From positions 353,338,001 through 353,402,000 of the forward strand of contig NC_091287.1 in the NCBI RefSeq assembly GCF_032444005.1: 64,000 nucleotides of DNA, in the 5' to 3' direction. This document shows, one piece after another, positions 5,009 to 62,989 of the stretch. Both the position numbers and the translations under genes were made by a program. Each line of letters begins with the position of its first letter. The stretch's first letter is position 1. Source of the DNA: Ranitomeya imitator. Lineage: Eukaryota. Under the pieces are notes generated by a model. That model was not told the DNA's origin, ran no database searches, and saw only the letters and a program-made list of their open reading frames with translations.

Positions 5009-6604
5009 CAGCACAGAGCAAAAGTTTGGACACACCTTCTCATTTAAAGATTTTTCTGTATTTTCATAACTATGAAAATTGTAAATTCACACTGAAGGCA
5101 TCAAAACTCTAAATTAACACATGTGGAATTATATACTTAGTGTGAAAAATATGTCTAATATTCTAGGTTCTTCAAAGTAGCCACCTTTTGCTTTGATGAC
5201 TGCTTTGCACACTCTTGGCATTCTCTTGATGAGCTTCAAGAGGTAGTCACCGTAAATGGCCTTCCAACAATCTTGAAGGAGCTCCCAGAGATGCCTAGCA
5301 CTTGTTGGCCCTTTTGCCTTCACTCTGCAGTCCAGCTCACTCCAAGCCATCTCCATTGGGTTCAGGTCTGGTGACTGGAGGTCAGGTCATCTGACGTAGC
5401 ACCCCATCCCTCTCCTTGGTCAAATAGCCCTTACACAGCCTGGAGGTGTGTTTAGGGTCATTGTCCTGTTGAAAAATAAATGATGGTCCAAGTAAACGCA
5501 AACCAGATGCAATAGCATGCCGCTGCAAAATGCTGTGGTAGCCGTGCTGGTTCAGTATGCCTTCAATTTTGAATAAATCCCCAACAGTGTCACCAGCAAA
5601 GCACCCCCACACCATCACACCTCCTCCATGCTTCACGGTGGGAACCAGGCATGTCCATCCGTTCACCTTTTCTGCGTTGCACAAAGACGCGCTGGTTGGA
5701 ACCAAAGATCTCAAATTTGGACTCATCAGACCAAAGCACAGATTTCCACTGGTCTAATGTCCATTCCTTCTGTTCTTTCGCCCAAACAAGTCTCTTCTGC
5801 TTGTTGCCTGTCCTTAGCAGTGGTTTTCTAGCAGCTATTTTACCATGAAGGCCTGCTGCACAAAGTCTCCTCTTAATAGTTTTTGTAGAGATATGTCTGC
5901 TACTAGAACTCTGTGAGGCATTGACCTGGTCTCTAATCTGAGCTGCTGTTAACCTGTGATTTCTGTGGCTGGTGACTTGGATAAACTTATCCTCAGAAGC
6001 AGAGGTGACTTTTGGTCTTCCTTTCCTGAGGCGGTCCTCATGTGAGCCAGTTTCTTTGTAGCGCTTGATGGTTTTTGCAACTGCACTTGGGGACACGTTC
6101 AAAGTTTTCCCATTTTTTTTGACTGACTGATGTTCATTTCTTAAAGTAATGATGGCTACTCGATTTTCTTTACTTAGCTGCTTTTTTCTTGCCATAATAC
6201 ACATTCTAACAGTCTATTCAGTAGGACTATCAGCTGTGTATCCACCAGACTTCTGCACAACTGATGGTCCCAACCCCATTTATAAGGCATGAAATCCCAC
6301 TTATTAAACCTGACAGGGCATACCTGTGAAGAGAAAACTATTTCCGGTGACTACCTCTTGAAGCTCATCAAGAGAATGCCAAGAGTGTGCAAAGCAGTCA
6401 TCAAAGCAAAAGGTGGCTACTTTGAAGAACCTAGAATATGAGACATAATTTCAGTTGTTTCACACTTTTTTGTTACGTATATAATTCCACATGTGTTAAT
6501 TCATAGTTTTGATGCCTTCAGTGTGAATGTACAATTTTCATAGTCATGAAAATACAGAAAAATCCTTAAATGAGAAGGTGTGTCCAAACTTTTGCTCTGT
6601 ACTG
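5009..6604 (-). mobile_element. Tc1-family DNA transposon (full length, decayed)
   Basis: Long TIRs starting CAG...AGAGCAAAAGTTTGGACACACC; TA TSDs at 5007-5008 and 6605-6606. Confidence 0.95.
5129..6204 (-). pseudogene. Tc1 transposase (DD34E type), frameshifted
   Basis: Three ORF pieces: HTH and WSDESKFE (5590-6204); VMVWGCF...FQQDNDPKH (5382-5726); MEMAWSELD...KAKGGY (5129-5356). Confidence 0.92.
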
Positions 6605-14779: not shown

Positions 14780-17010
14780 GGAACTGAAACAATGTGGAAG
14801 GAAAAAATGAACATTTAACTTTTTTTTGCAAACATCTTAATTCAGAACCATTTTTTTTATTTTCACAAGTGTAAAAACAGAAATGTAACCATAAATTTTG
14901 TTATGCAATTTCTCCTGAATACGCCAATACCCCATATGTGGGGGTAAACCACTGTTAGGGCGCACCGCAGAACTTAGAAGTGAAGGAGCGCCGTTTGACT
15001 TTTTCAATGCAGAATTGGCTGGAATTGAGATCGGACACCATGTCACATTTAGAGAGCCCCTGATGTACCTAAACAGTGGAAACTCCCCACAAGTGACACC
15101 ATTTTGGAAACTAGACCCCTTAAGGAACTTATCTAGATGTGTGGTGAGCACTTTGAACCCCCAAGTGCTTCACAGAAGTTTATAACGTAGAGCCGTGAAA
15201 ATAAAAAATCGCTTTTGTTTACACAAAAATGATTTTTTTGCCCACAAATTCTTATTTTCACAAGGGTAACAGGAGAAATTAGACCACAAAAGTTGTTGTG
15301 CAATTTCTCCTGAGTACGCTGATACCCAATATGTGGGGGTAAACAACTGTTAGGGCGCACCGCAGAGCTTGGAAGAGAAGGAGTGCCGTTTCACTTTTTC
15401 AATGTAGAATTGGCTGGAATTGAGATTGGACGCCATGTCGCGTTTGGAGAGCCCCTGATGTGCCTAAACAGTGGAAACCCCCCACAAGTGACACCATTTT
15501 GGAAACTAGACCCCTTAAGGAACTTATCTAGATGTGTGGCAAGCACTTTGAACCCCCATGTACTTCACAGAAGTTTATAACGTAGAGCCGTGAAAAAAAA
15601 AAATTGCATTTTTTCTACAAAAATGATCTTTTTGCCCACAAATTTTTATTTTCACAAGGGTAACAGGAGAAATTAGACCACAAAAGTTGTTGTGCAATTT
15701 CTCCTGAGTACGTCGATACCCAATATGTGGGGGTAAACCACTGTTTGGGCGCACCGCAGAGCTTGGAAGAGAAAGAGTGCCGTTTTACTTTTTCAATGTA
15801 GAATTGGCTGGAATTGAGATCGGACGCCATGTCGCGTTTGGAGAGCCCCTGATGTGCCTAAACAGTAGAAATCCCCCACAAGTGACCCCATTTTGGAAAC
15901 TAGACCCCCATGGAACTTATCTAGATGTGTGGTGAGAACCTTGAATGCCCAAGTGCTTCACAGAAGTTTATAATGCAGAGCCGTGAAAATAAAAAATATT
16001 TTTTTTTTCCACAAAAAAGATTTTTTAGCCACCAAATTTTTATTTTCACAAGGGTAACAAGAGAAACTGGACCCCAAAAGTTGTTGTCCAATTTGTCCTG
16101 AGTATGCTGGTACCCCATATGTGGGGGTAAACCACTGTTTGGGCGGACGGCAGAGCTCGGAAGGAAGGAGCGCCGTTTTGGAATGCAGACTTTGATAGAA
16201 TGGTCTGCGGGTATTATGTTGCGTTTGCAGAGCCCCTGATGTACCTAACCAGTAGAAACCCTCCACAAGTGACCCCATTTTGGAAACTAGACCCCCCAAG
16301 GAACTTATCTAGATGTGTGGTGAGAACTTTGAATGCCCAAGTGCTTCACAGAAGTTTAGAATGCAGAGTCGTGAAAATAAAAAATATTTTTTTTTCCACA
16401 AAAAAGATATTATAGCCCCCAAGTTTTTATTTTCACAAGGGTAACAGGAGAAATTGGACTGCAATAGTTGTTGTCCAATTTATCCCGAGTACGCTGATGC
16501 GCCATATGTGGCGGTAAACCACTGTTTGGGCGCACGGCAGAGCTCGGAAGGGAAGGAGCGCCTTTTTGGAATGCAGACTTTGATAGAATGGTCTGTGGGC
16601 ATTATGTTGCGATTGCAGAGCCCCTGATGTACCTAAACTGTAGTAACCCCCCACAAGTGACCCCATTTTGGAAACTAGACCCCCCAAGGAACTTATCTAG
16701 ATGTGTGGTGAGAACTTTGAATGCCCAAGTGCTTCACAGAAGTTTAGAATGCAGAGTCGTGAAAATAAAAAATATTATTTTTTTCACAAAAAAGATTTTG
16801 TAGCCCCCAAGTTTTTATTTTCACAAGGGTAACAAGAGAAATTGGACCCCAATTTATCCCGAGTACGCTGATGCCCCATATGTGGGGGTAACCCACTGTT
16901 TGGGCGCACGGCAGAGCTCAGAAGGGAGGGAGCACCATTTGACTTTTTGAGCGCAAAATTGGCTGTCGTATTTGGAGACCCCCTGATGTACCTAAACAGT
17001 GGAAACCCCC
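14780..17010. repeat. ~390-bp tandem array (5-6 units)
   Basis: GGAAACTAGACCCC...GGAACTTATCTAGATGTGTGG recurs at about 15108, 15502, 15896, 16284 and 16672. Confidence 0.9.
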
Positions 17011-17019
17011 CAATTCTAG

Positions 17020-17929
17020 CTCCAACCCTAACCCCAACACACCCCTAACCCTAATCCCAACCTCATCCATAATCCTAATCACTAACCCTAACCATAATCA
17101 CAACCCTTACCCCAAAACAACCCTAATGTCAACCCTAACCATAACCCTAATCAAAACCCTAAATCCAACACACCCCTAATCCTAATCTCAACCCTAACCT
17201 CAAACCTAACCCTAATCCCAATACACCCCTAATCACAACCCTAACCTTAACCCTAATCCCAAACCTAACCCTAATCCCAAGCGTAACCCTAATGCCAACC
17301 CTAATCCAAACCCTAACCCTAATACGAACCCTAATCCAAACCCTAACCCTAATCCCAGCTCTAACCCTAACTTTAGCCCCAACCCTAGCCCTAACTTTAG
17401 CCCCAACCCTAACCCTAGCCCTAGGGCTACTTTCACACTTGCGTCCTTTGGCATTACGTCGCAATCCGTCGTTTTGGACAAGAAACGGATCCTGCAAATG
17501 TGCCCGCAGGATGCGTTTTTTGCCCATAGACTTGTATTGCCGACGGATCGTGACGGATGGCCACACGTCGCGTCCGTCGTGCACTGGATCAGTTGTGTTT
17601 TGGCGGAGCGTCGGCACAAAAAAAGTTCAATGAAACGTTTTTTTGTACGTCGCATCCGCCATTTCTGATCGCGCATGCGTGGCCGTAACTCCGCCCCCTC
17701 CTCCCCAGGACATAGATTGGGCAGCGGATGTGTTGAAAAACTACAGCTGCTGCCCACGTTGTGCACAATTTTCACAACGTGCGTCGGTATGTCGGGCCGA
17801 CGCATTGCGACGGCCCCGTACCGACGTAAGTGTGAAAGAAGCCTAACCCTAAGTTTAGCCCCAACACTAACCCTAAATTTAGCCCCAACCCTAACCCTAA
17901 ATTTAGCCCCAACCCTAGCCCTAACCCTA
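17020..17929 (-). repeat. Degenerate telomere-like (CCCTAA)n tract, interrupted by a MITE
   Basis: CCCTAA, CCCCAA and CCCTAG repeats at 17020-17424 and 17844-17929. Confidence 0.9.
17425..17843. mobile_element. Harbinger-type MITE (419 bp)
   Basis: TIRs GGCTACTTTCACACT / AGTGTGAAAGAAGCC followed by TAA; same family as 33813-34233. Confidence 0.85.
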
Positions 17930-18219
17930 NNNNNNNNNNNNNNNNNNNNNNNNNNNNNNNNNNNNNNNNNNNNNNNNNNNNNNNNNNNNNNNNNNNNNNN
18001 NNNNNNNNNNNNNNNNNNNNNNNNNNNNNNNNNNNNNNNNNNNNNNNNNNNNNNNNNNNNNNNNNNNNNNNNNNNNNNNNNNNNNNNNNNNNNNNNNNNN
18101 NNNNNNNNNNNNNNNNNNNNNNNNNNNNNNNNNNNNNNNNNNNNNNNNNNNNNNNNNNNNNNNNNNNNNNNNNNNNNNNNNNNNNNNNNNNNNNNNNNNN
18201 NNNNNNNNNNNNNNNNNNN
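17930..18219. other. Assembly gap (290 N)
   Basis: Run of N. Confidence 1.
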
Positions 18220-34465: not shown

Positions 34466-36102
<1,637 letters not shown>

Positions 36103-37438: not shown

Positions 37439-39189
37439 GTTACCACGGTAGACTTGAAGCGCTGGCATCCTTGGTTTAAAAACCACCAAGGACAACATCT
37501 ACACAGTTTGTTCTCCTTGTGTTTGCATGGGTTTCCTCGGAGTTCTCCAGATTCCTCCCACACTTGAAATACATACTGATAGGGAATTGACAATGTGAGC
37601 CCCAAGGGGACACAGCGATGCTGATGTCTGTAAAAAGCTGTGGAAATAATGACGCTATATAAGTGACTAAAATAATTAAATACTTTGTATAGTATACTGG
37701 TTTGTTATCGGGTTGATGTTTTTGGCAAAGGTTCATTTAGATGGGCCAATAATTGGGGAACAAGCGTTCACGGGAACGTGCAGTCAATCGCCCAACGATT
37801 GAGCCAAGTGCTTGTTTATCATATGTGCCAATTATGATACTTACTGAAAAATCATTATTATTGCCAGCACATCTTCCTGTGTAAATAGGAGACGTGCTGC
37901 CGAAAACATGACATTCTATGTGAGCAGAAATATGGTATTAACAATTGTTCCATGTGCACAAAACATTCATCGGCCTGTGTAAGCGGTCGGCAAGAATATA
38001 TGTTCCATGACTGAGGTCATCTGTTGAAAATAGGAGGGTGTTTGTCCAACTTTGCCTAGGGGCTAATACAGCTTGTGAAGCCAGTGAGTCGGCCATGTAA
38101 GATTACAAGCTCAATTTACATAAATTACATCAGCAGGCATAAGAGTTGAGCTTGATGGGCGTTTTCATAATCAACCTGACTCCTTATAATAACTGAATTT
38201 ACCCAAGCCGAGTTCTTTCCACTGTTAAGTGCATATGTGTTAGATGAAATCTTTAGCGGTACAGGCAGGGCCGTATTTGCCACTAGGCACTCGAGGGCAC
38301 GTGCCTAGGGCGGTAAGGAAACGGGGGGCGGCACCCGAGCAAGGCAAGATTTTTATTTTTTTTTTTTTATTTAAATCCGGGTCCGACTGCCCGTTCACCC
38401 TCCTCGTACTTCCCGCCCTCCTCGTCCTCCTCCCCGCCCACCCCAGTCTTCCGGCTGCTGCTGCAGTCTCGGATCCAGTCCTGTCACATGTACGGCGCAG
38501 GGGGCCGGAAGCGGAAACAAGTCACACCGCAGGCCCCACCCCCTCCTCGTTGAAGCGCCAAGTTCAATTCCGTCCTGAGTCCTGTGTCGGCCGCTTACCC
38601 GCATCTGTCTGCTGTTGGTGTCTCGGATGGATCCCACCAGGGGCGGGCAGGGTGCAGATGCCCCCGGGCCAGTCCCCCAGCAGCCGGTTCAGGCCGTTTG
38701 CAGACGCCCACACTGTGTGCAGTAGTCAGTGTGTGCTAAAGTCACCTGGCTGGCCTGGAAGGAGGAGATCCAGAGCGGCACAGCGCCCCCGGTCCAGATC
38801 ACTGCCAGCTAGGGAGGTCCTGGGATCTAACAGTGACAGCCAAAGAGAAAAGGGAGGAAAAAAAAGCATCTTGGAAAGGTATGTGGAGAACACTGGGCCA
38901 GAGCGAGGCCTCAGCCTGCAGGGAGGCACTCTTGCCAGCTGGCAGCACATACCTCTCGACAGTCCTGGATTCAGCGGATCCACATCCGTCCACCTGCAGA
39001 GCCGTGCACTGCACATAACATATGTGGCTGCACTGTGCGCACAGGACCTGTGATGAGGTCACAGGAGGGGAGGAGTCAGGGGGTCACATGATCAGGGCCT
39101 CAGTGTATGCAGGACTCTGCTGTGCTGGTTGTCATGGTGATGGACGAGGGTAAGTTTATGTGTGGGGTAAGGAGGGGTTTACAGTGTGG

Positions 39190-39830
39190 ATGGAGCAGAG
39201 CCGGGTGTGTACGGAGCGGAGCCGGAGGTGTACGGGTGTGTACGAGGTGTACAGAGCAGAGCCAGGTGCGAACGAGGTGTATGGAGCAGAGCCGGGTATG
39301 TACAAGGTGTACGGAGCAGAGCCGGGTGTGTACGAGGTGTACGGAGCAGAGTCGGGTGTGTACGAGGTGTACTGAGCAGAGTAAGGTGTGTACGAGGTGT
39401 ACGGAGCAGAGCCGGGTGTGTACGAGGTGTACGGAGCAGAGCCGGGTGTGTATGAGGTGTACGGAGCAGAGCCGGGTGTGTACGAGGTGTACGGAGCAGA
39501 GTCGGGTGTGTACGAGGTGTACGGAGCAGAGTAAGGTGTGTACGAGGTGTACGGAGCAGAGCCGGGTGTGTACGAGGTGTACGGAGCAGAGTCGGGTGTG
39601 TACGAGGTGTACGGAGCAGAGCCGGGTGTGTACGAGGTGTACAGAGCAGAGCCGGGTGTGTACGAGGTGTACAGAGCAGAGTCGGGTGTGTACGAGGTGT
39701 ACAGAGCAGAGCTGGGTGTGTACGGAGCAGAGCCGGGTGTGTACGAGGTGTACGGAGCGGAGGTGTACGGGGGTGTATGGAGCGGAGCTAGGTGTGTACG
39801 AGGTGTACAGAGCGTGTCGGCATGTGTGCA
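39190..39830. repeat. 30-bp minisatellite inside the hAT element
   Basis: GTGTACGAGGTGTACGGAGCAGAGCCGGGT repeated roughly 18-20 times. Confidence 0.95.
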
Positions 39831-40394
39831 AGGTGTACGGTGCGGAGTTGTATGTGTGTGTGTGTGTGGAGCAGAGTTGTGTGTGAGGTGTACGGAGCGG
39901 AGCCGGGTGTGTGTGCGGAGCCACATGTGTACGGAGCACACATGTGGAGCCATTATACAGTATGGAGCACTGTGTGGTGTATATATGTGTGTATACTGTG
40001 CCCCCCTGTGCAGTGTATCTGTGATACATATACATGTCCCTGTCCTGTAATAACGTCCCCTGTCCTGTAATAACGTTTCCAGTCCAGTGATCCCATCCCC
40101 CGTCCTGTAATAATACCTTGTCCTGTAGTAATGGTCTGTCTTGTAAGTAGGATCACAGGAGGCCGAGTCCCTTCCTCTGGAAGTCTGCAGTGGCAGAAGT
40201 GGGACAATGCAGCGGGCCCTGAATGGGAGGAGGGGGTGTCCCAGCGGTGCAATGCTGCGGGCTTGATGTTGGCGGTGAGCTAAGTGGAGTGCATTCCTTT
40301 CCTGGCGGACATATTTCTGAAGCTGTGGGCCAATGGAGGCAGCGCATGTGGAGATTGTGATCTTGGTCCAGATGCGATCTCAGTCTGTGGGGGA

Positions 40395-44363: not shown

Positions 44364-46504
<2,141 letters not shown>

Positions 46505-48790: not shown

Positions 48791-51700
48791 TTAAGGAGGG
48801 GTCACCGAACCCTCACCAGAGCCCCCAGGCCGATCAGGATGAGCCAAATGAAAAGCACGAACCAAATCGGCGGCATGAACATCGGAGGCAACAACCCAAG
48901 AATTATCCTCCTGGCCATAACCCTTCCACTTGACAAGATACTGAAGCTTCCACCTCGAAAAACGAGAATCCAAAATTTTCTCAACCACATATTCCAACTC
49001 CCCCTCAACCAACACCGGGGCAGGAGGATCAACAGATGGAACAACGGGCACCACATATCTCCGCAACAAAGATCTATGGAAAACATTGTGGATGGCAAAA
49101 GAGGCTGGAAGGGCCAAACGAAAAGACACAGGATTGATAATCTCAGAAATCTTATAAGGACCAATAAACCGAGGCTTGAAGTTAGGGGAAGAAACCTTCA
49201 TAGGAACATGACGAGAGGACAACCAAACCAAATCCCCCACACGAAGCCGAGGACCAACACACCGACGGCGGTTAGCAAAACGCTGAGCCTTTTCCTGGGA
49301 CAACGTCAAATTGTCTACCACATGAGTCCAAATCTGCTGTAACCTGTCCATCACAGAATCAACACCAGGACTATCAGAAGGCTCAACCTGCCCTGAAGAA
49401 AAACGAGGATGGAAACCAAAATTACAAAAGAAAGGCGAAACCAAAGTAGCCGAACTGGCCCGATCATTAAGGGCAAACTCGACCAACGGCAAGAAAGTCA
49501 CCCAATCATCCTGATCAGCAGACCCAAAGCATCTCAAATAGGTTTCCAAGGGCTGATTAGTTCGCTCAGTTTGGCCATTGTTCTGAGGATGGAACGCCGA
49601 AGAAAAAGACAAATCAATACCCATCCTAGCACAAAAGGCCCGCCAAAACCTGGAAACAAACTGGGAACCTCTGTTAGACACAATATTCTCCATGCAAACG
49701 AACCACATGCTGAAAAAGCAATGGAACCAAATCAGAGGAGGAAGGCAATTTAGGCAAAGGTACCAAATGGACCATTTTAGAGAACCGGTCACAAACCACC
49801 CAGATAACAGACATCCTCTGGGACACAGGAAGATCCAAAATAAAATCCATGGAAATATGCATCCAAGGCCTCTCCGGGACGGGCAAAGGCAAAAGCAACC
49901 CACTAGCGCGGGAACAGCAAGGCTTGACTCGGGCGCAAGTCCCACAGGACTGCACAAAAGCACGGACATCACGCGACAAGGAAGGCCACCAAAAGGACCT
50001 AGCAACCAAATCTCTGGTACCAAAAATCCCAGGATGACCAGCCAACACTGAACAATGGACCTCAGAAATCACCTCACTCGTCCATCTATCAGGAACAAAC
50101 AGCTTCCCCACAGGACAGCGGTCAGGCCTATCAGCCTGAAATTCCTGAAGCACCCGCTGCAAATCAGGGGAGATGGCAGAAAGAATCACCCTTCCTTAAG
50201 AATGCCAACCGGCTCAAGGACTCCAGGAGAATCCGGCAAAAAACTCCTAGAGAGGGCATCCGCCTTAACATTCTTAGATCCTGGAAGATATGAGACCACA
50301 AAATCAAAACGGGAGAAAAACAGGGACCACCAAGCCTGTCTAGGGTTCAGCCGCTTGGCCGACTCAAGGCAAATCAAATTCTTATGATCGGTCAAGACCA
50401 CAATGCGGTGCTTGGCTCCCTCAAGCCAATGTCGCCACTCCTCAAATGCCCACTTCATAGCCAACAACTCCCGATTGCCGACATCATAATTGCGTTCCGC
50501 AGGCGAAAACTTTCGGGAAAAGAAGGCACATGGCTTCATCAAGGAACCATCAGAATTCCTCTGTGACAAAACGGCCCCTGCCCCAATCTCAGAAGCGTCA
50601 ACCTCAACCTGAAAAGGTGGAGAAACATCCAGTTAACGCAACACAGGGGCAGAAGTAAATCGGCGTTTAAGCTCCTGAAAGGCCTCAACAGCCTCAGAGG
50701 ACCAATTAGTCACATCAGCGCCTTTCTTCGTCAAATCGGTCAGGGGTTTAACCACACTAGAGAAGTTGGCAATGAAACGGCGATAAAAATTAGCAACGCC
50801 CAAAAATTTCTGAAGGCTCTTCACAGATGTGGGTTGAATCCAGTCATGAATGGCTTGGACCTTAACAGGATCCATTTCTATAGACGAAGGTGAAAAAATA
50901 AACCCCAAAAAAGAGACCTTCTGAACTCCAAATAGGCACTTAGACCCCTTCACAAATAGAGCATTATCACGAAGGATCTGGAATACTGTTATGAATAGGT
51001 AATTCAGAACCACAATGGACCTTGAAGTTCAGAGCACACAAAGTGACCTGACAATAAGCAAAAAACATAGGACGAGCTCTGAGACGTGGGAACTCTGCTG
51101 ACCACAATCCCTAATCCTATCACACCACACTAGAGGTAGCCGTGGATTGCGCCTAACGCTCCCTATGCAACTCGGCACAGCCTGAGAAACTAGCTAGGCC
51201 TGAAGATAGAAAAATAAGCCTACCTTGCCTCAGAGAAATTCCCCAAAGGAAAAGGCAGCCCCCCACATATAATGACTGTGAGTTAAGATGAAAGTACAAA
51301 CACAGAGATGAAATAGATTTAGCAAAGCGAGGCCCGACTTACTGAATAGACCGAGGATAGGAAAGATAGCTTTGCGGTCAACACAAAAACCTACAAACAA
51401 CCACGCAGAGGGGCAAAAAGACCCTCCGCACCGACTAACGGTACGGAGGTGCTCCCTCTGCGTCTCAGAGCTTCCAGCAAGCAAGAAAAACAAATTAAAG
51501 CAAGCTGGACAGAAAATATAGCAACAAAAGTAACACAAGCAGAACTTAGCTTATGCTGAGCAGACAGGCCACAGGAACGATCCAGGAGGAAGCAAGACCA
51601 ATACTAGAACATTGACTGGAGGCCAGGATCAAAGCACTAGGTGGAGTTAAATAGAGCAGCACCTAACGACTTAACCTCATCACCTGAGGAAGGAAACTCA

Positions 51701-52819
51701 GAAGCCGCAGTACCACTTGTGACCACAGGAGGGAGCTTGATCACAGAATTCACAACAGAATACCATCCTGACCTGCTTCACATGAGACTCCCAATCATCG
51801 GAAAAAATCAAAATATCATCCAAATACACAATCAGGAATTTGTCAAGATAATTGCGGAAAATATCATGCATGAAAGACTGGAACACAGATGGAGCATTAG
51901 AGAGCCCAAATGGCATCACAAGGTATTCAAAATGGCCTTCGGGCGTATTAAATGCAGTCTTCCATTCGTCACCCTGTTTAATACGAACAAGATTATATGC
52001 CCCTCAAAGGTCAATCTTGGTAAACCAACTAGCCCCCTTAATCCTAGCAAACAAATCAGAGAGCAAAGGTAAAGGATATTGGAATTTGACCGTGATCTTA
52101 TTGAGAAGGCGATAATCAATACAGGGTCTTAAGGAGCCATCCTTCTTGGTAACAAAAAAGAATCCCGCTCCCAATGGTGACGAAGACGGCCGAATATGCC
52201 CCTTCTCTAAAGACTCCTTAACATAGCTCAGCATGGCGGCATGCTCTGGCGCAGACAGGTTGAAAAGTCGGCCCTTAGGGAACTTACAGCCAGGAATCAA
52301 GTCAATAGCACAATCACAGTCCCTGTGTGGTGGAAGGGAACTGGACTTGGGCTCATCGAATACATCCTGGAAATCTAACAAAAATTCAGGAACATCAAAA
52401 GAGGGGGAAGAGGAAATTGACATCAAAGGAACGTCACTATGTACCCCTTGACAACCCCAACTAGTCACAGACATTGATTTCCAATCCAGCACTGGATTGT
52501 GTACTTGTAACCATGGAGAACCCAGTACAACAACATCATGTAAATTATGCAACACCAGAAAACGGCAATCTTCCTGATATGCAGGAGCCGTGTACATAGT
52601 CATCTGCGTCCAGTACTGAGGTTTATTCTTGGCCAATGGTGTAGCATCAATACCCCTCAAGGGTATGGGACTCTGCAAAGGCTGCAAAGAAAAACCACAG
52701 CGCCTAGCGAATTCTAAGTCCATTAAGTTCAGAGCAGCGCCTGAATCCACAAATGCCATGACAGAAAAAGATGACAATGAGCAAATCAAGGTCACAGACA
52801 GGAGAAACTTAGGCTGCAC
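48791..52819 (-). pseudogene. pol: Gypsy pol (protease, RT, RNase H, integrase, chromodomain), frameshifted and interrupted
   Basis: AFVDSGA (PR); [25 protein letters not shown] (RT); CAFFSRK (RNase H); H..GHPG...C..C, SMDFI, NGQTER (IN); FIGPY; EYVVEKILDSR...YLVKWKGYGQEDNSWV (chromodomain). Confidence 0.95.
50987..51757 (-). mobile_element. Solo LTR of a related subfamily inserted into the RT coding region
   Basis: 771 bp; TG...CA ends; 6-bp TSD GAATAC; RT sequence resumes across it. Confidence 0.93.
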
Positions 52820-52963
52820 AGTACTAATGGTAACAGATCTAGCAACCCTCTTAACCCTGCTGTTCTGTTGGTCAAAAATGACCGACTTTGAACTTCAATA
52901 TTCTTTAAAATATTCAAGATGCGGCTCTGAAACCCGTGGCCGACCGACCCATTCTCATTTAAG

Positions 52964-53877
52964 TCAATCAACCACAAGTTTCAGAACCGCATCTTGAACA
53001 CCCCCAAAAATACCAAAGTTCAAAATAGGTCTCCCCAGACCGAACAGAACAGCAGGGTTAATACGCTTAGGGCAATCAGAAATAGTATGAACAGAATCAC
53101 CACAGTAAAAACACAGCCCATTCTGACGTCTGTATCCCCTCTGTTCCGCTCTAGTCAAAATCCTATCACATTTCATGGGCTCAGGACTTTGCTTAGAGGA
53201 CACTGCCATATGGTGCACCACTTTGCGTTCGCGCAGGCGCCGATCAATCTGAATGGCCAGAGACATAGATTCGCTCAAACCAACAGGCGTGGGAAACCCC
53301 ACCATAACATCTTTAAGGGCTTCAGAAAGACCCTTTCTGAAAATTGCTGCCAGAGCGTTCTCATTCCATTTAGTGAGCACAGACCATTTTCTAAATTTCT
53401 GGCAGTATAATTCTGCCACTTCCTGACCCTGACACAGGGCCAACAGTGTTTTCTCAGCATGCTCTACAGAGTTAGGTTCGTCATACAATAATCTGAGCGA
53501 TTGAAAAAATGCATCTACATTAAGCAATGCCGGATTCCCTGACTCAAGTGAGAATGCCCAGTCCTGAGGGTCGCCACGCAGTAGAGAAATAACTATCTTT
53601 ACTTGCTGAACGGGGTCACCAGGGAACGGGGTTTCAGAGAAAAAAACAATTTGCAGTTATTTTTAAAGTTCAAAAACTTAGATCTATCCCCGTAAAACAA
53701 ATCCGGAGTAGGAATTCTAGGCTCTAAGGCCGGAGTCTGAACCACATAATCTTGAATAGTCTGTACTCTTGCAGCAAGCTGATCCACATGAGAAAGCAAA
53801 CCCTGAACATCCATGCCTGCATCCAAATCCCGAATCACCCAGAGATCAAGAGGAAGGAAAAAGACAAAACAAACCAA
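52964..53877 (-). pseudogene. gag: Gypsy gag with CCHC zinc knuckle, frameshifted
   Basis: PTPDLFYGDRSKF; LAIQIDRRLRER; LCFYCGDSVHTISDC. Confidence 0.9.
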
Positions 53878-54779: not shown

Positions 54780-55560
54780 TGGTTTATTACTATTGTATTT
54801 TTGTTTGTTTTTCTATACTTTTACTATTTCTGGAAAATATTAACCCTTTTTTCCTTTCCTGTTATATTATTGAAATTTTCTAAATAAAGAATATATCCAA
54901 AAAAAAAATTTATGTATCAAAAAATGATACCAATAAAAACCCTAAGTTATAAAACACAAACAAGCCATCACTCATGTCTGTCATTTGTCACTGGAACTAC
55001 ACCCCTAGATAGCAATGAAGTTTCCAAAATAGGGGTCACTTGAGGGGGTTTCTGCTGTTTTAGTACCTCTGGGGCTCTGCAAATGAGACATGGTGTCTGC
55101 AATCTATTCCTGCCAAATTAACGCTTCAAAATCCAAATACCGCCTCTTCCCTTCCAAGCTCTGCCATGTGCCAAACAGCAGTTTTTGACCAAATATGTGA
55201 TATTGTCAAATTCAGGAGAAATTGTGTAATACATTTTAGGGTCCATTTTCCCGCATTACCCCTTGTGAAAATTAAAAATTTGCAGCTAAAGCAATAATCT
55301 AGTAGAAAAAATGTAATTTTTCCATTTTGTCAATCCACTTTGCCTCAATTCCTGTATAGTACCTGAAGGGTTAGCAAATTTACTAACTGCAGTTTAGAAT
55401 AAACTGAGATGTGCAGTCTTTAAAATGTTATCAACTTTGGGTGTTTTCTGATATAAAGGGCCCCTCAAAGTCCCTTCAAAACCAAATTGGAAATGGATTT
55501 GTAAATTTTCTTGACTTTTTTAAATTGCTGCAAAATTTTAACCCTTCTAATAGAAGAAAA
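54780..55560. mobile_element. Decayed fragment of the ~390-bp-unit piggyBac-like family
   Basis: TTTCCAAAATAGGGGTCACTTGAGGGGG and downstream motifs shared with 3100-4700. Confidence 0.6.
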
Positions 55561-55599
55561 GAAAACAGCAACAACAAAAGCAACAATAGCAGAAATTGG

Positions 55600-56986
55600 T
55601 GTTTTCCCCTCAAGCTTTAAACATGCCTCCATCACACCTATCCTCAAAAAGCCCTCCCTTGACCCATCCTCTGTATCTAGCTATCGCCCTATATCACTTC
55701 TCCCCTTTGCCTCAAAACTACTGGAACAACATGTCCATCTTGAACTGTCCTCCTATCTATCTTGCTGCTCCTTCTTCGACCGCTTTCAATCAGGCTTCCG
55801 GTCACACCACTCCACTGAAACTGCCCTAACTAAGGTCACCAATGACCTATTAACTGCCAAGAGCAAGCGACTCCTCCTGGACCTGTCCTCTGCCTTTGAC
55901 ACAGTGGACCATTCCCTGCTGCTACAGACCCTCTCATCCCTTGGCATCACAGACTTGGCCCTATCCTGGATCTCGTCATACCTAACTGACCGGACATTCA
56001 GCGTCTCCCACTCACACACCACCTCCTCACCTCGCCCCCTATCTGTCGGAGTCCCTCAAGGTTCAGTTCTAGGACCCCTGCTCTTCTCCATTTACACCTT
56101 TGGCCTGGGACAGCTCATAGAATCTCATGGCTTTCAGTATCATCTCTATGCTGACGACACACAGATCTACATCTCTGGACCAGATATCACCTCCCTACTA
56201 ACCAGAATCCCTCAATGTCTGTCTGCTATTTCATCCTTCTCCGCTAGATTTCTAAAACTTAACATGGACAAAACAGAATTCATCATCTTTCCCCCATCTC
56301 ACACGACCTCCCCAACGAACCTATCCATTACAGTAAACGGCTGCCCACTCTCCCCAGTCCCACAAGCCCGCTGTCTTGGGGTAATCCTTGACACTGATCT
56401 CTCCTTTAAACCACATATCCAAACCCTTTCCACTTCCTGCCGCCTCCAACTCAAAAATATTTCACGGATCCGTACATTCCTAAACCAAGAATCTGCAAAA
56501 ACCCTAGTCCATGCCCTCATCATCTCCTGCCTCGACTACTGTAACCTCCTGCTCTGTGGCCTCCCCTCTAACACTCTTGCACCCCTCCAATCTATTCTAA
56601 ACTCTGCTGCCAGACTAATCCACCTGTCCCCCTGCTATTCCCCGGCCTCTCCCCTCTGTCAATCCTTGCACTGGCTCCCCATCACCCGGAGACTCCAGTA
56701 CAAAAGCCTAACCATGACATACAAAGCCATCCACGACCTGTCTCCTCCATACATCTGCGACCTCGTCTCCCGGTACTTACCTACACGCAACCTCCGATCC
56801 TCACAAGATCTCCTTCTCTACTCCCCTCTTATCTCCTCTTCCCACAATCGTATACAAGATTTCTCTCGCCTATCACCCCTACTCTGGAACTCTGTACCAC
56901 AACATATCAGACTCTCACCTACCATCGAAACCTTCAAAAAGAACCTGAAGACGCACCTCTTCCGACAAGCCTACAACCTGCAGTAA
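55600..56986 (+). pseudogene. L2 ORF2 reverse transcriptase and C-terminal domain (no endonuclease)
   Basis: [48 protein letters not shown]; the ORF-track start at 55511 lies in unrelated flank. Confidence 0.92.
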
Positions 56987-58516: not shown

Positions 58517-59896
58517 ATGACATAATATAAAAATATATGGCCTTGATAGGCTTAAAATTAGGCAATTCCTGGCAACCATCCGAACAACTTATGCTCGAAA
58601 TACCCTTCTCCAAGTTCATTACTGATGTCTTTTCCCCTTGGCATCGTGATAACACATGCCTGAATGTTCCAGACCAGCAAATTGACAAAACTTCTGCTTT
58701 TATACAGGTGCTCATACTTACCAATGAACAATTAAGGGCATTTAATTTGAAGAACTTGGCTGCTAATTACTTTATTAATTACTATTGAAGCAGCAAGGGT
58801 TTACTTAGCTTTTAACACACTGTCATGTATACAGTTGTGCTTAAACGTTTACATATCTCAGCACAATTTTTACTTTCCTGGCCTTTTTTCAGAGATTATG
58901 ATTGACAACACCAAAACATTTTCTCCACTCATGGTTAGTGGTTGGGTGAAGCCATTTATTGTCAAACTACTGTGTTTTCTCTTTTTTAAATCATAGTGAC
59001 AACCCAAAACATCCAAATGACCCTGATCAAAAGTTCACATACCCTGGTGATTTTGGCCTGATAACATGCACAGAAGTTGACACAAATGGGTTTGAATGGC
59101 TACTAAAGGTAACATGCTCACCTGTGACCTGTGTGTGCATAAAAGCTGAGTGAATTTCTGTGATCCAGACAGACTCTTGCATTATTTCATCCAGCCACTG
59201 ACATTTCTGGATTGTGAGTCATGGGGAAAGAAAAAGAATTGTCAATGGATCTACGGGAAAAGGTAGTTGAACTGTATAAAACAGGAAAGGGATGCAAAAA
59301 GATATCCAAAGAATTGATAATGCCAATCAGCAGCGTTCAAACCGTGATTAACAAATGTAAAATCAGGGGCTCTATAAAAACAAAACCACGGTTAGGTAGA
59401 CCAACAAAAATGTCATCCACAACTGCCATGAAAATTGTTTGGGATGCAAAGAGAAAAACTCCACAAATAACATCAGCTGAAATACAGGACTCTCTGAAAA
59501 CTAGTGGTATGGTTGTTTCAAATTGCACAATAAGGAGGCACTTGAAGAAAAATGGACTGCATGGTTGAGTCGCCAGAAGAAAGCCATTACTGCACAAATG
59601 CCACAAAATATCCCGCCTACAATACGCAAAACAGCACAGAGACAAGTCTCAAAGCGTCTGAAACAAGGTAATTTGGAGTGATGAGACCAAAATTTAACTT
59701 TTTGGCCACAACCATAAAACCCTACATTTGAAGAGAGGTCAACAAGGCCTATGATGAAAGGAAAACCATTCCTACTGTAAAGCCTAGAGGTGGATCACGG
59801 GTGTTTGAGCTAAAAAGGCACAGGAAACTTGGTCAAAGTTGAAGGAAAGATGAATGCAGCACGTTATGTAGCGTTTCCCTTACTTCGGGTCTTGGG

Positions 59897-60309
59897 TCTC
59901 TCCCTAAGGTGGCTAGCATATATGTATCGCTTGCTCACCGAGCCCCACTCCATACAGCCAACCAATTCCAGCCCTGTGCTGATGAGGGCCTAAAGCCCGA
60001 AACACGTGTCCACAGGTAGGAATTGGTTGGATGTGTAAATTTAGAAACTAATCCGCAGCATTGCACGCTTGGCGGTTCCAAGCGCTGTGGATTAGACAGG
60101 GGTGGAAAGAGATGATTTGCATAGTTCCGCCTACTGCAAAGGATTCTGGGTAAACCTGCTATTCTTTGTATTATGCTGCTTGCAAGTACTTTCCGTTTCA
60201 GGAAAGCATCCACTATGTATTTCCTTTAAGTAGAGGGCTTTTCGGTCTCTTTCGTCCCGCTACATTTAGCCCAACTTGGGTCTCTCCCTAAGGTGGCTAG
60301 CATATATGT
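59897..60309 (+). mobile_element. Retrozyme-like / Penelope-mobilised non-autonomous retroelement (384-nt period)
   Basis: 13-bp TSD TTCGGGTCTTGGG (59884-59896, 60310-60322); identical 35-nt repeat at 59891-59925 and 60275-60309; contains a hammerhead ribozyme. Confidence 0.75.
59973..60016 (+). ncRNA. Type I hammerhead ribozyme
   Basis: Stem I CCTGTG/CACAGG; core CTGATGA; stem II GGGC-CTAAA-GCCC; core GAAA; stem III AC-ACGT-GT; cleavage triplet GTC at 60008-60010. Confidence 0.92.
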
Positions 60310-62989
60310 TTCGGGTCTTGGGGACACTCGCTTTGCACGGGAATAACGCATACAGGCACGATTTTCTCACACAAATTAAGTCCGTTCCGGTTTTTTAAAG
60401 CATCATAAACTGCACCATAAGCCAGGCTACACACAGTCTGTTACTTTAACACATGTGGCTTTACAAAACATTCGGTAGTCACGTCTTTTCTCTCCATTAC
60501 AGTTCATTAGATGCATCAATGGAACATATTAAACCCTGACAGTCTGTTCCAATGGGAGATACGTCTCTGCCGTATATTACAGGTTTTTCCCACACCAGGG
60601 GTTACCTCTCAGGAGCTTCAGCTCCACACACTGACTCCTGCCAGTGCTGGTTCACAGGGAAACTGCATCACTGGGATCACTGTCCTTGTGACCAGGGCAC
60701 CTCTGATAGTCCAGACCCACAGTAGGAACTGTAGCTTCCCAACACAGAAACCATCTCAGGCTCTGCAGTTGCAGCCTTTCCATGCGCTTCCAGGAAGTCC
60801 AATCACAGGCACATCCAACACACAGGCCATCAGTCCATGATCTTACCAAGTGCTTACAGGACTCCAGTCCATCCCAGGACAATCCAACACTCTGACCATT
60901 GCAGGACTCACACTCTTACCAGGTGCTTGCAGGACTCCAGTCCATACCAGGACAATCCAACACCCTCGAGCATTCAGTCCATAGCCTCAGCAGTGCTTCC
61001 AGGACTACAGCCCTCTTCAGGACAATCAAACACTGACCGTCCACTAGGTCCACAGTCTCAGGTGCTTGCAGGAGTTCTCCAATTGTCAGGAGACTCCAAC
61101 ACCAACCGTCCAGGACCTTGTACATGGAACAAACAGATCCATACACAGGGACCATGTGACCCACACCCTGGTCACATTATCTAGGTGTAACCACTCCCCT
61201 GGGTGGGTGTGGATGTGTGTGCCTAGTTCGACCCTCCTATCTCTCATATCTAGCCATGCCAGTCTCCCATTAGCATTACACAATTACTTGTGGGACTACA
61301 GGTCCCAGCACACCAAATTAACTTCAGACTAACAGCGCAGAGTGTCTTCCTCTGCAACACACACACCGGCCATTTACACTCCTGCCGGACTTTGTCTCAT
61401 CACATTTATGCCTCCAAGCGCATCTTGAAGCACACACACAGCACCCCCTGGCTGTAACGTGGGTCACTGCACCACAGTTGTCAGCAAATAATGGCGGAAA
61501 ATTTGCAATCATCAGCCTGGAAGCTACACATGGGACGTACTTGGACATTCCAACATGACAATGATCCAAAACACAAGGCCAAGTCCACCTGTCATTGGCT
61601 ATAGCAAAACAAAGTGAAGGTTCTGAAGATGCCATCTCAGTCTTCTGACCTCAATATCATTGAACCACTCTGGGGAGATCTCAAGCAGTTCATGCTAAAC
61701 AAACCAGGAATTTACAGGAACTGGAGGCTTTTTGCCAAGAAGAGTGGGCAGCTTTACCAGCTGAGAAAATAAACTACCTCGTCCACAACTACCACAAAAG
61801 ACTTCAAGCTGCCATTAATGTTAGAGGGGGCAATACACGGTATTAAGATATGGGGTATGTGAACTTTTGATCAGGGTCATTTGGATGTTTTGGGTTGTTA
61901 TTATGATTTAAAAAGAGAAAACACAGTAGTTTGACAATAAATGGCTTCACCCAACCACTAACCATGAATGAAGAAAAAGTTTTCGTGTTCTCATTCATGT
62001 TCTCTGATAAAAGGCCAAGAAAGCAATAATTCTGCCAGGGTATGTAAACTTTTGAGCATAACTGTATATGAAATGTAAAATCTCTCCTCCATTCAAGTGA
62101 AAAAATTAAACACCTTTAATAATGCATATCCAAACAGCAATGTTTCAGTTCCTCCTGGAACCTTACTCAAGCCAGCTTCAGAAAGGTTCCAGGAGGAACT
62201 GAAACACTGTTGTTTGGATATGCACTAATAAAAGCATTTTTTTTTTCATGAAGGAAGGAGTGTTGTTTTTTGATTTTTTGTGGACCTGGTTGAGGTCTGC
62301 AGAGGATTTATACCCTATAGTACTTTGATGTTGCTTCTAGTCGTTATGTATTTATAGCTATACAGTAAACGTTTTAGGCAGGTGTAAAAAAAAAAGTCTA
62401 GATGGTAATGATGCTTTAAAAAAATAGAAGTGTTAATAGATTATTTTGTTATCAATTAATAAAATGCAAAGTAATTGCACAAGATAGAAATCTAAATCAC
62501 ATCAATATTTGGTGTGACCACTCTTTGCCTTCAAAACAACATCAAATCATCAATTTTTTTAAGAACAACTGCATACAGAGTTAAAGAACTTGGCAGGGAG
62601 CTTATTCCAAATATCTTGAAGAACAAACCATAGATCTTCTGTGGATGTAGGCTTGCGGAAATTCCTGTTTCTTAATGTAGTACCAGACAAACTCTGTGAT
62701 GCTGACATCAGAGCTCTGTCAAAGCTATATGTTGTCCTGCTACAAAATGTGATTATAGCCAATCAGAGACTACCATAATTTTTTTATAATTTTATAGACA
62801 ATCATCTTGGCTATCTCATACATAAATTTGACTTATAACTGTTTAAAATATAGTGAGCTATGCAGATTCTTGTCATGTCACTGTATTGTTATTGTTTTGC
62901 TTCTGGTGGTGGAAAAATCTTTTTCTTTCTGTATACTACAAATTACAACCTGTTCTCAAATTCTCTAATAGCTCAGGTCAATGGTTCGC

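What the first reader, a model, noticed from the sequence alone, without database searches (positions are those of the whole stretch)
59958..60030. Complete type I hammerhead ribozyme with a palindromic helix III and extended helix I
Seen in sequence: CCTGTG-CTGATGA-GGGC(CTAAA)GCCC-GAAA-C-ACGT-GTC-CACAGG places every conserved hammerhead core nucleotide correctly, with predicted cleavage after C60010 (GUC). Helix III has only 2 bp, but 60002-60009 (ACACGTGT) is a perfect palindrome. Helix I continues past a 3x2 internal loop (AGC/TA) into a perfect 12-bp stem (59958-59969 with 60019-60030). Established: type I hammerheads with a tiny palindromic helix III are typical of Penelope-like elements and of amphibian satellite or retrozyme repeats, and cleave as dimers. 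Inference: the internal loop may dock with loop II (CUAAA), so this copy may still be active.
Basis: partly seen in the sequence, partly recalled or inferred. Interest (0 to 1): 0.9.

Follow-up and report, generated by a model that had tools for sequence, protein, structure and literature searches.

The report
Solo hammerhead ribozyme retroelement copy
The sequence is a real, complete self-cleaving hammerhead RNA motif, but it sits in a single stranded copy of a small mobile element buried inside other transposons, which is the ordinary, well-described home of such ribozymes in animal genomes.

Summary
Window 59958-60030(+) holds every conserved hammerhead core nucleotide, a 6-bp helix I, a 4-bp helix II, a 2-bp helix III inside the palindrome ACACGTGT, and a 12-bp distal stem. 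The predicted cut is after C60010. Chance gives about 0.005 relaxed matches per window.

Rfam does not call it at gathering score; the best match is HH9 at 31.1 bits against 52. A model built from 41 independent environmental relatives with the same helix III scores it 65.9 bits. Those relatives show strong covariation in helices I and II, and 10 of the 20 scanned pass Rfam Hammerhead_1.

The ribozyme lies in a 413-bp non-coding insert (59897-60309). The insert is one 384-bp unit plus a perfect 29-bp terminal redundancy, flanked by a perfect 13-bp target-site duplication. It is nested in an unclassified 1.17-kb insert, which is nested in a Tc1 transposon; a related Tc1 copy gives that element's empty site.

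This fits a monomer copy of an animal non-LTR retrozyme (Penelope-related). With one ribozyme and no partner in cis, the locus is probably a dead-end copy. Activity, genomic copy number and host species were not testable. It is a new member of a known kind, of low interest.

The parts
59958..60030 (+). Complete type I hammerhead ribozyme: distal helix I, internal loop, proximal helix I, core, helix II, helix III
   Evidence: Sequence read directly; R1 model 65.9 bits, E 4e-21; Rfam HH9 31.1 bits, below gathering; fold z = -5.45.
59979..59985 (+). Core C3-A9 (CUGAUGA)
59986..59998 (+). Helix II GGGC/GCCC with 5-nt loop CUAAA
   Evidence: Helix II covaries in relatives: 3 of 4 pairs change on both sides and 99.4% of cells are paired.
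59999..60010 (+). G12 A13 A14, then the helix III palindrome ACACGUGU (60002-60009), then C17. The predicted cut is between 60010 and 60011.
   Evidence: In the monomer, forming the 2-bp helix III costs about +1 kcal/mol. In the dimer the palindrome forms an 8-bp intermolecular helix.
59973..59978 (+). Proximal helix I, 5' strand (CCUGUG); it pairs with 60011-60016 (CACAGG)
   Evidence: All 6 helix I pairs change on both sides among relatives.
59897..60309 (+). 413-bp non-coding hammerhead element: one 384-bp unit plus a 29-bp perfect terminal redundancy (59897-59925 = 60281-60309; 38/39 identity over 59891-59929 / 60275-60313)
   Evidence: (D3). Unit GC is 0.48. The unit folds at -137.6 kcal/mol, z = -4.9, with hammerhead helices I and II kept. 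No Pfam domain in its ORF.
59884..59896 (.). Left copy of the 13-bp target-site duplication TTCGGGTCTTGGG
   Evidence: Identical to 60310-60322; these are the only two occurrences in the window.
60310..60322 (.). Right copy of the 13-bp target-site duplication
60041..60097 (+). Strong hairpin just 3' of the ribozyme, inside the unit
   Evidence: Seen in the sequence and in the MFE and centroid folds of the unit.
59868..61481 (.). Whole 1.6-kb insertion in the Tc1 transposase gene. It consists of host element X (59868-59896 plus 60323 to about 61468-61476, about 1.17 kb, non-coding, with a 73-bp tandem repeat at 60849-61033), the nested hammerhead element, and X's right target-site duplication. 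That duplication is GTTAT/GTTGT, or possibly 12-13 bp: GCAGCACGTTAT / GCACCACAGTTGT.
   Evidence: Empty site from the related Tc1 copy L046: L046 1-960 aligns to 58931-59867 and L046 956-1392 aligns to 61477-61909. Tandem repeat. No homologues or domains.
58832..62054 (+). Tc1/mariner DNA transposon (CAGT...ACTG ends, TA flanks, about 217-bp inverted terminal repeats). Its transposase ORF is interrupted at 59867/59868.
   Evidence: I1, I3; HTH_SB and HTH_Tnp_Tc3_2 homologues.

Best explanation
This is a genuine canonical metazoan type I hammerhead ribozyme. It is carried by a single, slightly longer-than-unit copy (413 bp, 1.08 units of 384 bp) of a small non-coding retroelement of the animal non-LTR retrozyme kind; these are thought to be non-autonomous relatives of Penelope-like elements. 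Shown: the motif, its fit to a class of covarying relatives, the terminal redundancy, the perfect 13-bp target-site duplication, and the nesting in element X and then in a Tc1 transposon. Inferred: the copy was made by target-primed reverse transcription of a template longer than one unit, either a circular RNA or a multimeric transcript. Under this reading, synthesis started at ...AUAUAUGU|AUCG on a TCG microhomology with the target. It ran through the ribozyme and 29 nt past its own start, and joined the upstream target end at a CTTGGG microhomology. Also inferred: in master tandem arrays, two ribozymes pair their ACACGUGU segments into an 8-bp helix III (a double hammerhead). They cut after C17 to release 384-nt monomers with 5'-OH and 2',3'-cyclic phosphate ends, which a tRNA ligase circularises. 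At this locus there is only one ribozyme. At most it could cut a read-through transcript once, weakly as a monomer or in trans with RNA from other copies. The locus is therefore most likely a dead-end copy with no host function.
For: All core nucleotides and the three helices are present. A chance match is very unlikely. Model R1, built without the window from 41 sequences, gives 65.9 bits, E 4e-21, and this is the only hit in 64 kb. Those relatives were selected only on the core plus helix III. In helices I and II they are 94.8% paired against 63.7% in shuffles, with a covariation score of 0.78 against 0.17. Nine of the 12 pairs change on both sides, and slid controls give 23-47% paired. Ten of the 20 relatives scanned pass Rfam Hammerhead_1 at gathering score, including L029, which shares the window's CC-AGC bulge. 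The dimer MFE is -76.7 against 2 x -33.0 kcal/mol, and its structure is the double hammerhead with an 8-bp helix III. The 13/13 target-site duplication and the 29/29 terminal redundancy are exact. The 384-bp size, GC of 0.48, lack of coding capacity and a duplication longer than 4 bp match published retrozyme features (PMC7229834; bioRxiv 10.64898/2026.07.22.740005, amphibian mean 316 bp, monomers dispersed). A 30-40-bp 'tail' is a signature of Penelope-type insertion (PMC11167929, PMC8557442). The unit folds compactly, z = -4.9. The outer nesting is proven by an empty site.
Against: No Rfam hammerhead family reaches its gathering score; HH9 gives 31.1 against 52. No second copy of the unit exists in the window, and no homologue of the unit outside the ribozyme core was found anywhere. 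Repetitiveness in the source genome is therefore unproven. There is no empty site for the 413-bp insert itself. The 13-mer could instead be part of an internal repeat of one composite 1.6-kb element. Loop I (AGC/UA) and loop II (CUAAA) depart from the consensus of the relatives, so tertiary docking and activity are uncertain. No Penelope RT or GIY-YIG ORF is present in the window. Cleavage was not tested.
Confidence: 0.75

Rival explanations
1. The ribozyme segment and the 1.17-kb sequence to its right are one composite non-autonomous element of about 1.6 kb. It would be a Penelope-derived or SINE-like element with the hammerhead near its 5' end, inserted once into the Tc1. The 13-mer and the 39-mer would be internal repeats, not a target-site duplication plus terminal redundancy.
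For: The whole 59868-61481 block is one insertion relative to the Tc1 empty site. The 13-mer overlaps the 39-nt repeat at both ends, so it can be read as partial tandem copies of a roughly 42-nt box. No empty site for the inner insert is available.
Against: A perfect 13-bp direct repeat exactly bracketing a unit-plus-redundancy block is the standard signature of a separate insertion. Removing the block leaves a continuous sequence with one copy of the 13-mer. The outer duplication is degenerate while the inner one is perfect, which suggests two events of different age. The rest of the block has no second hammerhead or pLTR-like repeat.
Confidence: 0.13
2. It is a solo pseudo-LTR fragment of an autonomous Penelope-like element, a truncated insertion, rather than a retrozyme monomer.
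For: Penelope pLTRs carry hammerheads, and insertions are often truncated with a 30-40-bp tail (PMC4209133, PMC8557442, PMC11167929). Retrozyme consensus sequences in Xenopus are sister to pLTRs (bioRxiv 10.64898/2026.07.22.740005), so the two classes blur into each other.
Against: Metazoan Penelope hammerheads are usually minimal: no helix III, a longer helix II and no loop contacts (PMC4209133). This one is the canonical 6/4/2-bp type found in retrozymes and satellites. There is no RT or GIY-YIG coding remnant in or next to the insert. The redundancy closes a 384-bp circle, which fits a small unit and not a 3-4-kb element.
Confidence: 0.1
3. It is a domesticated, host-functional hammerhead like the amniote intronic HH9/HH10 ribozymes, acting on a host transcript.
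For: The best Rfam match is HH9 over the full model length. The core is intact.
Against: The score is far below HH9's gathering value (31.1 against 52). The motif sits in a young insertion with a perfect target-site duplication, nested inside two other transposons. No host exon is evident nearby.
Confidence: 0.02

Closest known systems
Canonical type I hammerheads of amphibian satellite 2 / axolotl non-LTR retrozymes (HHR_Amex1, HHR_Amex2; PMC7229834)
   Same: Type I topology, 6-bp helix I, 4-bp helix II. Helix III is 2 bp capped by a tetraloop, as in HHR_Amex2. The helix III segment is palindromic, which allows dimeric action. The unit is 330-390 bp, non-coding, with GC below 50%.
   Different: This is a single 1.08-unit copy, not a tandem array. 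Loop II has 5 nt (CUAAA) and the helix I bulge is AGC/UA rather than the usual UAC/U. The distal helix I is 12-16 bp, against a median of 3 bp in 42 relatives. No sequence similarity outside the core could be tested against the published units.
Rfam Hammerhead_1 (RF00163) and Hammerhead_HH9 (RF02275), clan CL00010
   Same: Same core and type I architecture. The window aligns end to end with the HH9 model. The nearest relatives, such as L029, pass Hammerhead_1.
   Different: The window sequence is below the gathering score of both families. HH9 is a conserved intronic element of amniotes, whereas this motif is in a transposon insertion.
Minimal hammerheads in pseudo-LTRs of Penelope-like elements (PMC4209133)
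   Same: A hammerhead carried by a retroelement. Dimeric action through a palindromic core-adjacent segment. Partial-tandem or tail structure of insertions and a variable-length target-site duplication.
   Different: Penelope motifs lack helix III and the loop contacts, and they flank an RT/GIY-YIG ORF. Here the ribozyme is canonical and no such ORF is present.
Schistosoma Sm-alpha hammerhead (crystallised full-length type I ribozyme; PMC6155905)
   Same: 6-bp helix I followed by an internal loop and a distal stem, a 4-bp helix II, and residence in a non-autonomous retroelement.
   Different: From memory, Sm-alpha has a UAC/U bulge and a 6-nt loop II. The window has an AGC/UA bulge and a 5-nt loop II, so the known loop-loop contacts cannot simply be transferred.

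Membership tests
Hammerhead ribozyme, type I | Conserved core: C3 U4 G5 A6 N7 G8 A9, G12 A13 A14, the A15.1-U16.1 pair, and H17 (not G) at the cleavage site | tested here: met
   CUGAUGA 59979-85, GAA 59999-60001, A60002-U60009, C60010.
Hammerhead ribozyme, type I | Three helices around the core, with helices II and III closed and helix I open | tested here: met
   Helix I has 6 bp plus a 12-bp distal stem. Helix II has 4 bp with a 5-nt loop. Helix III has 2 bp with a 4-nt loop.
Hammerhead ribozyme, type I | Covariation supporting helices I and II among relatives | tested here: met
   In 41 environmental relatives plus the window, 94.8% of cells are paired against 63.7% in shuffles, and 9 of 12 pairs change on both sides. 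These relatives are of the same class, not copies from the same genome, which could not be searched.
Hammerhead ribozyme, type I | Score at or above the Rfam gathering threshold of a hammerhead family | tested here: not met
   No gathering-score hit in the window. HH9 gives 31.1 bits against 52, so Hammerhead_1 must be below its 34. Only 10 of the 20 clear relatives scanned pass, so the threshold is conservative for this class.
Hammerhead ribozyme, type I | Site-specific self-cleavage | not testable with these tools
   Needs in vitro transcription of monomer and dimer constructs.
Hammerhead_HH9 (RF02275) | Gathering score of 52 bits and a conserved intronic position in amniotes | tested here: not met
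   The score is 31.1 bits. The locus is a nested transposon insertion.
Animal non-LTR retrozyme | Small non-coding unit (about 170-400 nt; 51-972 bp in the 2026 survey) carrying a canonical type I hammerhead, with GC below 50% | tested here: met
   384-bp unit, GC 0.48, no protein domain, canonical ribozyme.
Animal non-LTR retrozyme | Head-to-tail tandem arrangement of two or more units, so that two ribozymes delimit a monomer | tested here: not met
   Only 1.08 units and one ribozyme are present. This matches the published 'monomer' derivatives, not an active array.
Animal non-LTR retrozyme | Target-site duplication longer than the 4 bp of plant LTR retrozymes, when one is present | tested here: met
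   A 13-bp perfect duplication.
Animal non-LTR retrozyme | Many copies in the genome; expression as linear and circular RNA | not testable with these tools
   The source genome and transcriptome are not available. There is no second copy in the window, and no homologues in the searchable collections beyond the core.
Penelope-like element (pLTR) | Adjacent ORF with a telomerase-like RT and a GIY-YIG endonuclease | tested here: not met
   No such ORF or Pfam hit in or near the insert, nor among window ORFs of at least 130 aa.
Penelope-like element (pLTR) | 30-40-bp 'tail' extension or partial-tandem structure of insertions | tested here: inconclusive
   The 29-bp perfect (39-bp near-perfect) terminal redundancy has the right size. 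It could equally arise from any reverse transcriptase copying a circular or multimeric template.

The most novel reading that the evidence does not exclude
The 1.08-unit copy, with a perfect target-site duplication and microhomologies at both junctions, may be a clean genomic footprint of reverse transcription that ran more than once around a circular retrozyme RNA. That would be sequence-level evidence for the proposed circular-RNA (rolling-circle) retrotransposition route in a vertebrate. The ribozyme, with its unusual AGC/UA bulge, 5-nt loop II and very long distal helix I, would then define a distinct and still active retrozyme family.
Probability: 0.25. Interest if true: 0.45.

Novelty: new member of a known kind. 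Interest (0 to 1): 0.2.

Why it matters
Hammerhead ribozymes in small tandem retroelements of animals have been described since 1987. They have been surveyed genome-wide in vertebrates, so one more copy adds little. There are two modest points of value. First, Rfam's curated thresholds miss this copy and about half of its clear relatives, so annotation pipelines undercount this class. Second, the exact junctions of this solo copy (13-bp duplication, 29-bp redundancy, microhomologies) give testable start and end points for the reverse transcription step of retrozyme mobility, which is still only hypothesised.

Tried and rejected
1. The Rfam gathering scan of the whole window found nothing. Only the permissive scan shows HH9 below threshold.
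2. An exact-pattern scan of viral contigs for the core gave 0 hits.
3. Literature and supplement searches for the ribozyme sequence found nothing relevant.
4. I tried to fish same-family copies through spurious ORFs across the ribozyme unit (92 aa) and across element X (109 and 115 aa). There were no homologues. The one hit, to a 1688-aa repetitive protein with 15 stretches, I regard as compositional.
5. Outside the roughly 33-47-nt core, blastn found no significant similarity between the 44 metagenome loci and the window; the only other matches were 20-24 nt at E of 0.04 or worse. Their larger ORFs are metazoan host genes (Ig, Neur_chan_LBD), not Penelope RT.
6. The source organism could not be identified. 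The closest Tc1 relatives are at most 83% identical and come from anonymous assemblies, and the sample accessions appear in no paper. The transposon content (Tc1, chromodomain gypsy, non-LTR RT) suggests a non-mammalian, non-avian vertebrate, but this is an impression and not a result.
7. No tRNA or other RNA family lies in the 3.3-kb neighbourhood.
8. The 394-bp satellite at 14854-16965 contains CTGATGT...GGAAAC. I checked it as a possible second ribozyme repeat and rejected it.
9. My first reading, a single insertion with a 12-13-bp duplication containing an internal 39-nt repeat, was replaced by the nested-insertion reading once the perfect 13-mer was found.

Full report
**Observation.**
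- Distal stem: CCAACCAATTCC (59958-59969) pairs with GGAATTGGTTGG (60019-60030).
- Internal loop: AGC/TA.
- Proximal helix I: CCTGTG with CACAGG.
- Core: CTGATGA.
- Helix II: GGGC/GCCC with loop CTAAA.
- Then GAA, and A-C/G-T around ACGT.
- C17 is at 60010.
- ACACGTGT (60002-60009) is a perfect palindrome.
- The distal stem extends to 16 bp with one mismatch (I5).

The bare core pattern is not rare; 0.34 matches are expected per shuffled window. A relaxed full descriptor occurred only twice in 400 simulated windows, before asking for the 12-bp distal stem or the palindrome. The 91-nt region folds at -38.8 kcal/mol, z = -5.45, with helices I and II in the centroid.

**Is it a hammerhead by model-based tests?**
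Rfam at curated thresholds reports nothing in the whole window. A permissive scan gives Hammerhead_HH9 end to end at 31.1 bits against a gathering score of 52, E 4e-6 for the 301 nt searched. Only the best clan member is listed, so Hammerhead_1 must score lower, below its 34 bits.

To get an independent test I scanned metagenome contigs for CTGATGAG-N9-14-CGAAACACGTGTC and obtained 44 loci. Those loci were selected on the core and helix III only. Even so, nearly all have a complementary helix I and helix II.
- In the 42-sequence alignment A1, 94.8% of cells pair, against 63.7% in shuffles and 23-47% when partners are slid.
- All six helix I pairs and three of four helix II pairs change on both sides.
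- The covariation score is 0.78 against 0.17.

A covariance model built from the 41 relatives without the window scores the window motif 65.9 bits, E 4e-21. It finds nothing else on either strand. Part of that score is by construction, since the core was the selection pattern. Ten of the 20 relatives scanned pass Rfam Hammerhead_1 at gathering score. They include L029 at 50 bits, which shares the window's CC-AGC bulge. Rfam's threshold therefore misses about half of this class, and the window copy is one of the misses.

**Architecture compared with the literature.**
Canonical metazoan type I hammerheads have a 6-bp helix I and a 4-bp helix II whose loops interact. Their helix III is 1-2 bp capped by a 2-4-nt palindromic loop, which makes them poor monomers but active dimers (PMC4209133). 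Axolotl HHR_Amex2, with 2 bp plus a tetraloop, cleaves 22% in 1 h as a monomer and much better as a dimer (PMC7229834). The window motif has exactly this 6/4/2 layout.

Thermodynamic prediction gives:
- Forming helix III in the monomer costs about 1 kcal/mol (-30.8 against -31.8).
- Two copies cofold at -76.7 against 2 x -33.0 kcal/mol.
- The dimer structure is the domain-swapped double hammerhead with an 8-bp ACACGUGU helix III.

The window departs from the class in three ways.
- The 5' bulge is AGC; among the 41 relatives it is UAC in 14, UGC in 4, and AGC in only one (L029).
- Loop II is the 5-nt CUAAA, unique in the set, where most have a 6-nt CAANAA loop.
- The distal helix I is 12 bp, against a median of 3 and a maximum of 7.

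**Context.**
The ribozyme lies inside a Tc1/mariner transposon (58832-62054; CAGT...ACTG ends, TA flanks, about 217-bp inverted repeats at 89% identity). The transposase reading frame stops making sense after ...KMNAARY at 59867. A related Tc1 copy from a public assembly (L046, found through the N-terminal ORF) aligns at 1-960 to 58931-59867 and at 956-1392 to 61477-61909. This is an empty site. Everything from 59868 to 61476-61481 is inserted, with a GTTAT/GTTGT duplication that may extend to GCAGCACGTTAT / GCACCACAGTTGT.

Within that block, a perfect 13-mer TTCGGGTCTTGGG occurs at 59884-59896 and 60310-60322 and nowhere else in the window. Between the two copies lie 413 bp whose first and last 29 nt are identical. 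Identity is 38/39 if the flanking microhomologies are counted (D3). This amounts to one 384-bp unit plus a short terminal redundancy. Removing 59897-60322 leaves a continuous sequence with a single 13-mer.

The simplest reading is three nested events. A Tc1 transposon received an unclassified 1.17-kb non-coding element X, which received the 413-bp hammerhead element. X carries a 73-bp tandem repeat at 60849-61033. It has no domains or homologues and might be a solo LTR. The inner event looks younger, because its duplication is perfect and the outer one is degenerate.

**What the element is.**
The unit is 384 bp, non-coding and has GC of 0.48. It folds compactly (-137.6 kcal/mol, z = -4.9) while keeping hammerhead helices I and II. 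It carries a canonical type I ribozyme and is bracketed by a 13-bp duplication. These are the published features of animal non-LTR retrozymes:
- units of about 170-400 nt, GC below 50%, and duplications longer than 4 bp (PMC7229834);
- a mean consensus of 316 bp in amphibians, with dispersed monomers beside clustered multimers, and sequence kinship with Penelope pseudo-LTRs (bioRxiv 10.64898/2026.07.22.740005).

The 29-39-nt redundancy matches the size of the 30-40-bp 'tail' typical of Penelope-type insertions. That tail has been traced to alternative reverse transcription start sites on a tandem template (PMC11167929, PMC8557442).

A copy longer than one unit needs a template longer than one unit, meaning a circular RNA or a multimeric transcript. 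I infer that synthesis began at ...AUAUAUGU|AUCG on a TCG microhomology with the nicked target. It then went once around plus 29 nt, and the cDNA end joined the upstream target at a CTTGGG microhomology. This is inference from the junction sequences and was not shown.

**What it does here.**
There is one ribozyme only. There is also no second copy of the unit in the window. The locus therefore cannot release a unit-length RNA or form a dimer in cis. At most, a read-through transcript would be cut once after C60010, weakly or in trans with RNA from other copies. I regard the locus as a dead-end monomer copy with no host function.

**What could not be done.**
The source genome is not searchable with these tools, so three things are untested: copy number, tandem master arrays, and an empty site for the inner insert. 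No homologue of the unit beyond the ribozyme core was found in viral or metagenome contigs, or through ORF-based searches. The host species is unidentified. The window holds Tc1 copies, a chromodomain gypsy element and a non-LTR RT, but no Penelope RT. Cleavage is untested.

**Verdict.**
This is a real, complete, canonical type I hammerhead in a solo retrozyme-type insertion. It is a new member of a well-known kind, and interest is low (0.2). The most novel reading still open is that the junctions record reverse transcription around a circular RNA and that the unusual loops mark a distinct active family (probability about 0.25).

Noticed in passing
window 14854-16965: A 394-bp tandem satellite with 5.4 copies and 88% matches. 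Its unit contains CCCCTGATGTRCCTAAACAGTGGAAAC, which superficially recalls a hammerhead core. But A9 is U, no helix II is possible, and neither the class model nor a permissive Rfam scan gives a ribozyme hit.
   Followed up: yes
window 17022-17929 (then N gap 17930-18219): Degenerate interstitial telomere-like (CCCTAA)n arrays lie directly after the 394-bp satellite and run up to a masked or gap stretch.
   Followed up: no
window 59868-59896 + 60323-61476: Unclassified non-coding insertion of about 1.17 kb (element X) that hosts the hammerhead element. It has a 73-bp tandem repeat (60849-61033), no protein domains, no homologues found and no second copy in the window. It may be a solo LTR, but it starts GT rather than TG.
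   Followed up: partly
window 62101-62246: A 72-nt-arm inverted repeat (85% complementary, 2-nt spacer) lies just outside the right end of the Tc1 element. It may be a MITE-like hairpin.
   Followed up: no
window 48791-53527(-), 55511-56986(+), 5590-6204(-), 34730-35760(-), 44581-45660(-): Dense transposon landscape: a Ty3/gypsy element with integrase zinc-binding, SH3 and chromodomain regions plus protease/RT; a non-LTR RT ORF of 491 aa; and several Tc1/mariner copies with long ORFs. No Penelope RT or GIY-YIG was seen.
   Followed up: partly
window 39100-40050: Long GC-rich minisatellite (a repeat of about 30 nt) that gives open reading frames on both strands. It is repeat-generated, not coding.
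   Followed up: no
L040:930-962 and 2345-2377 (-); L022:3528-3560 (-): Among the environmental relatives, one contig carries two identical-type hammerheads 1415 bp apart in direct orientation. Another hammerhead lies on a metazoan contig next to ORFs with Ig and neurotransmitter-gated channel domains.
   Followed up: partly
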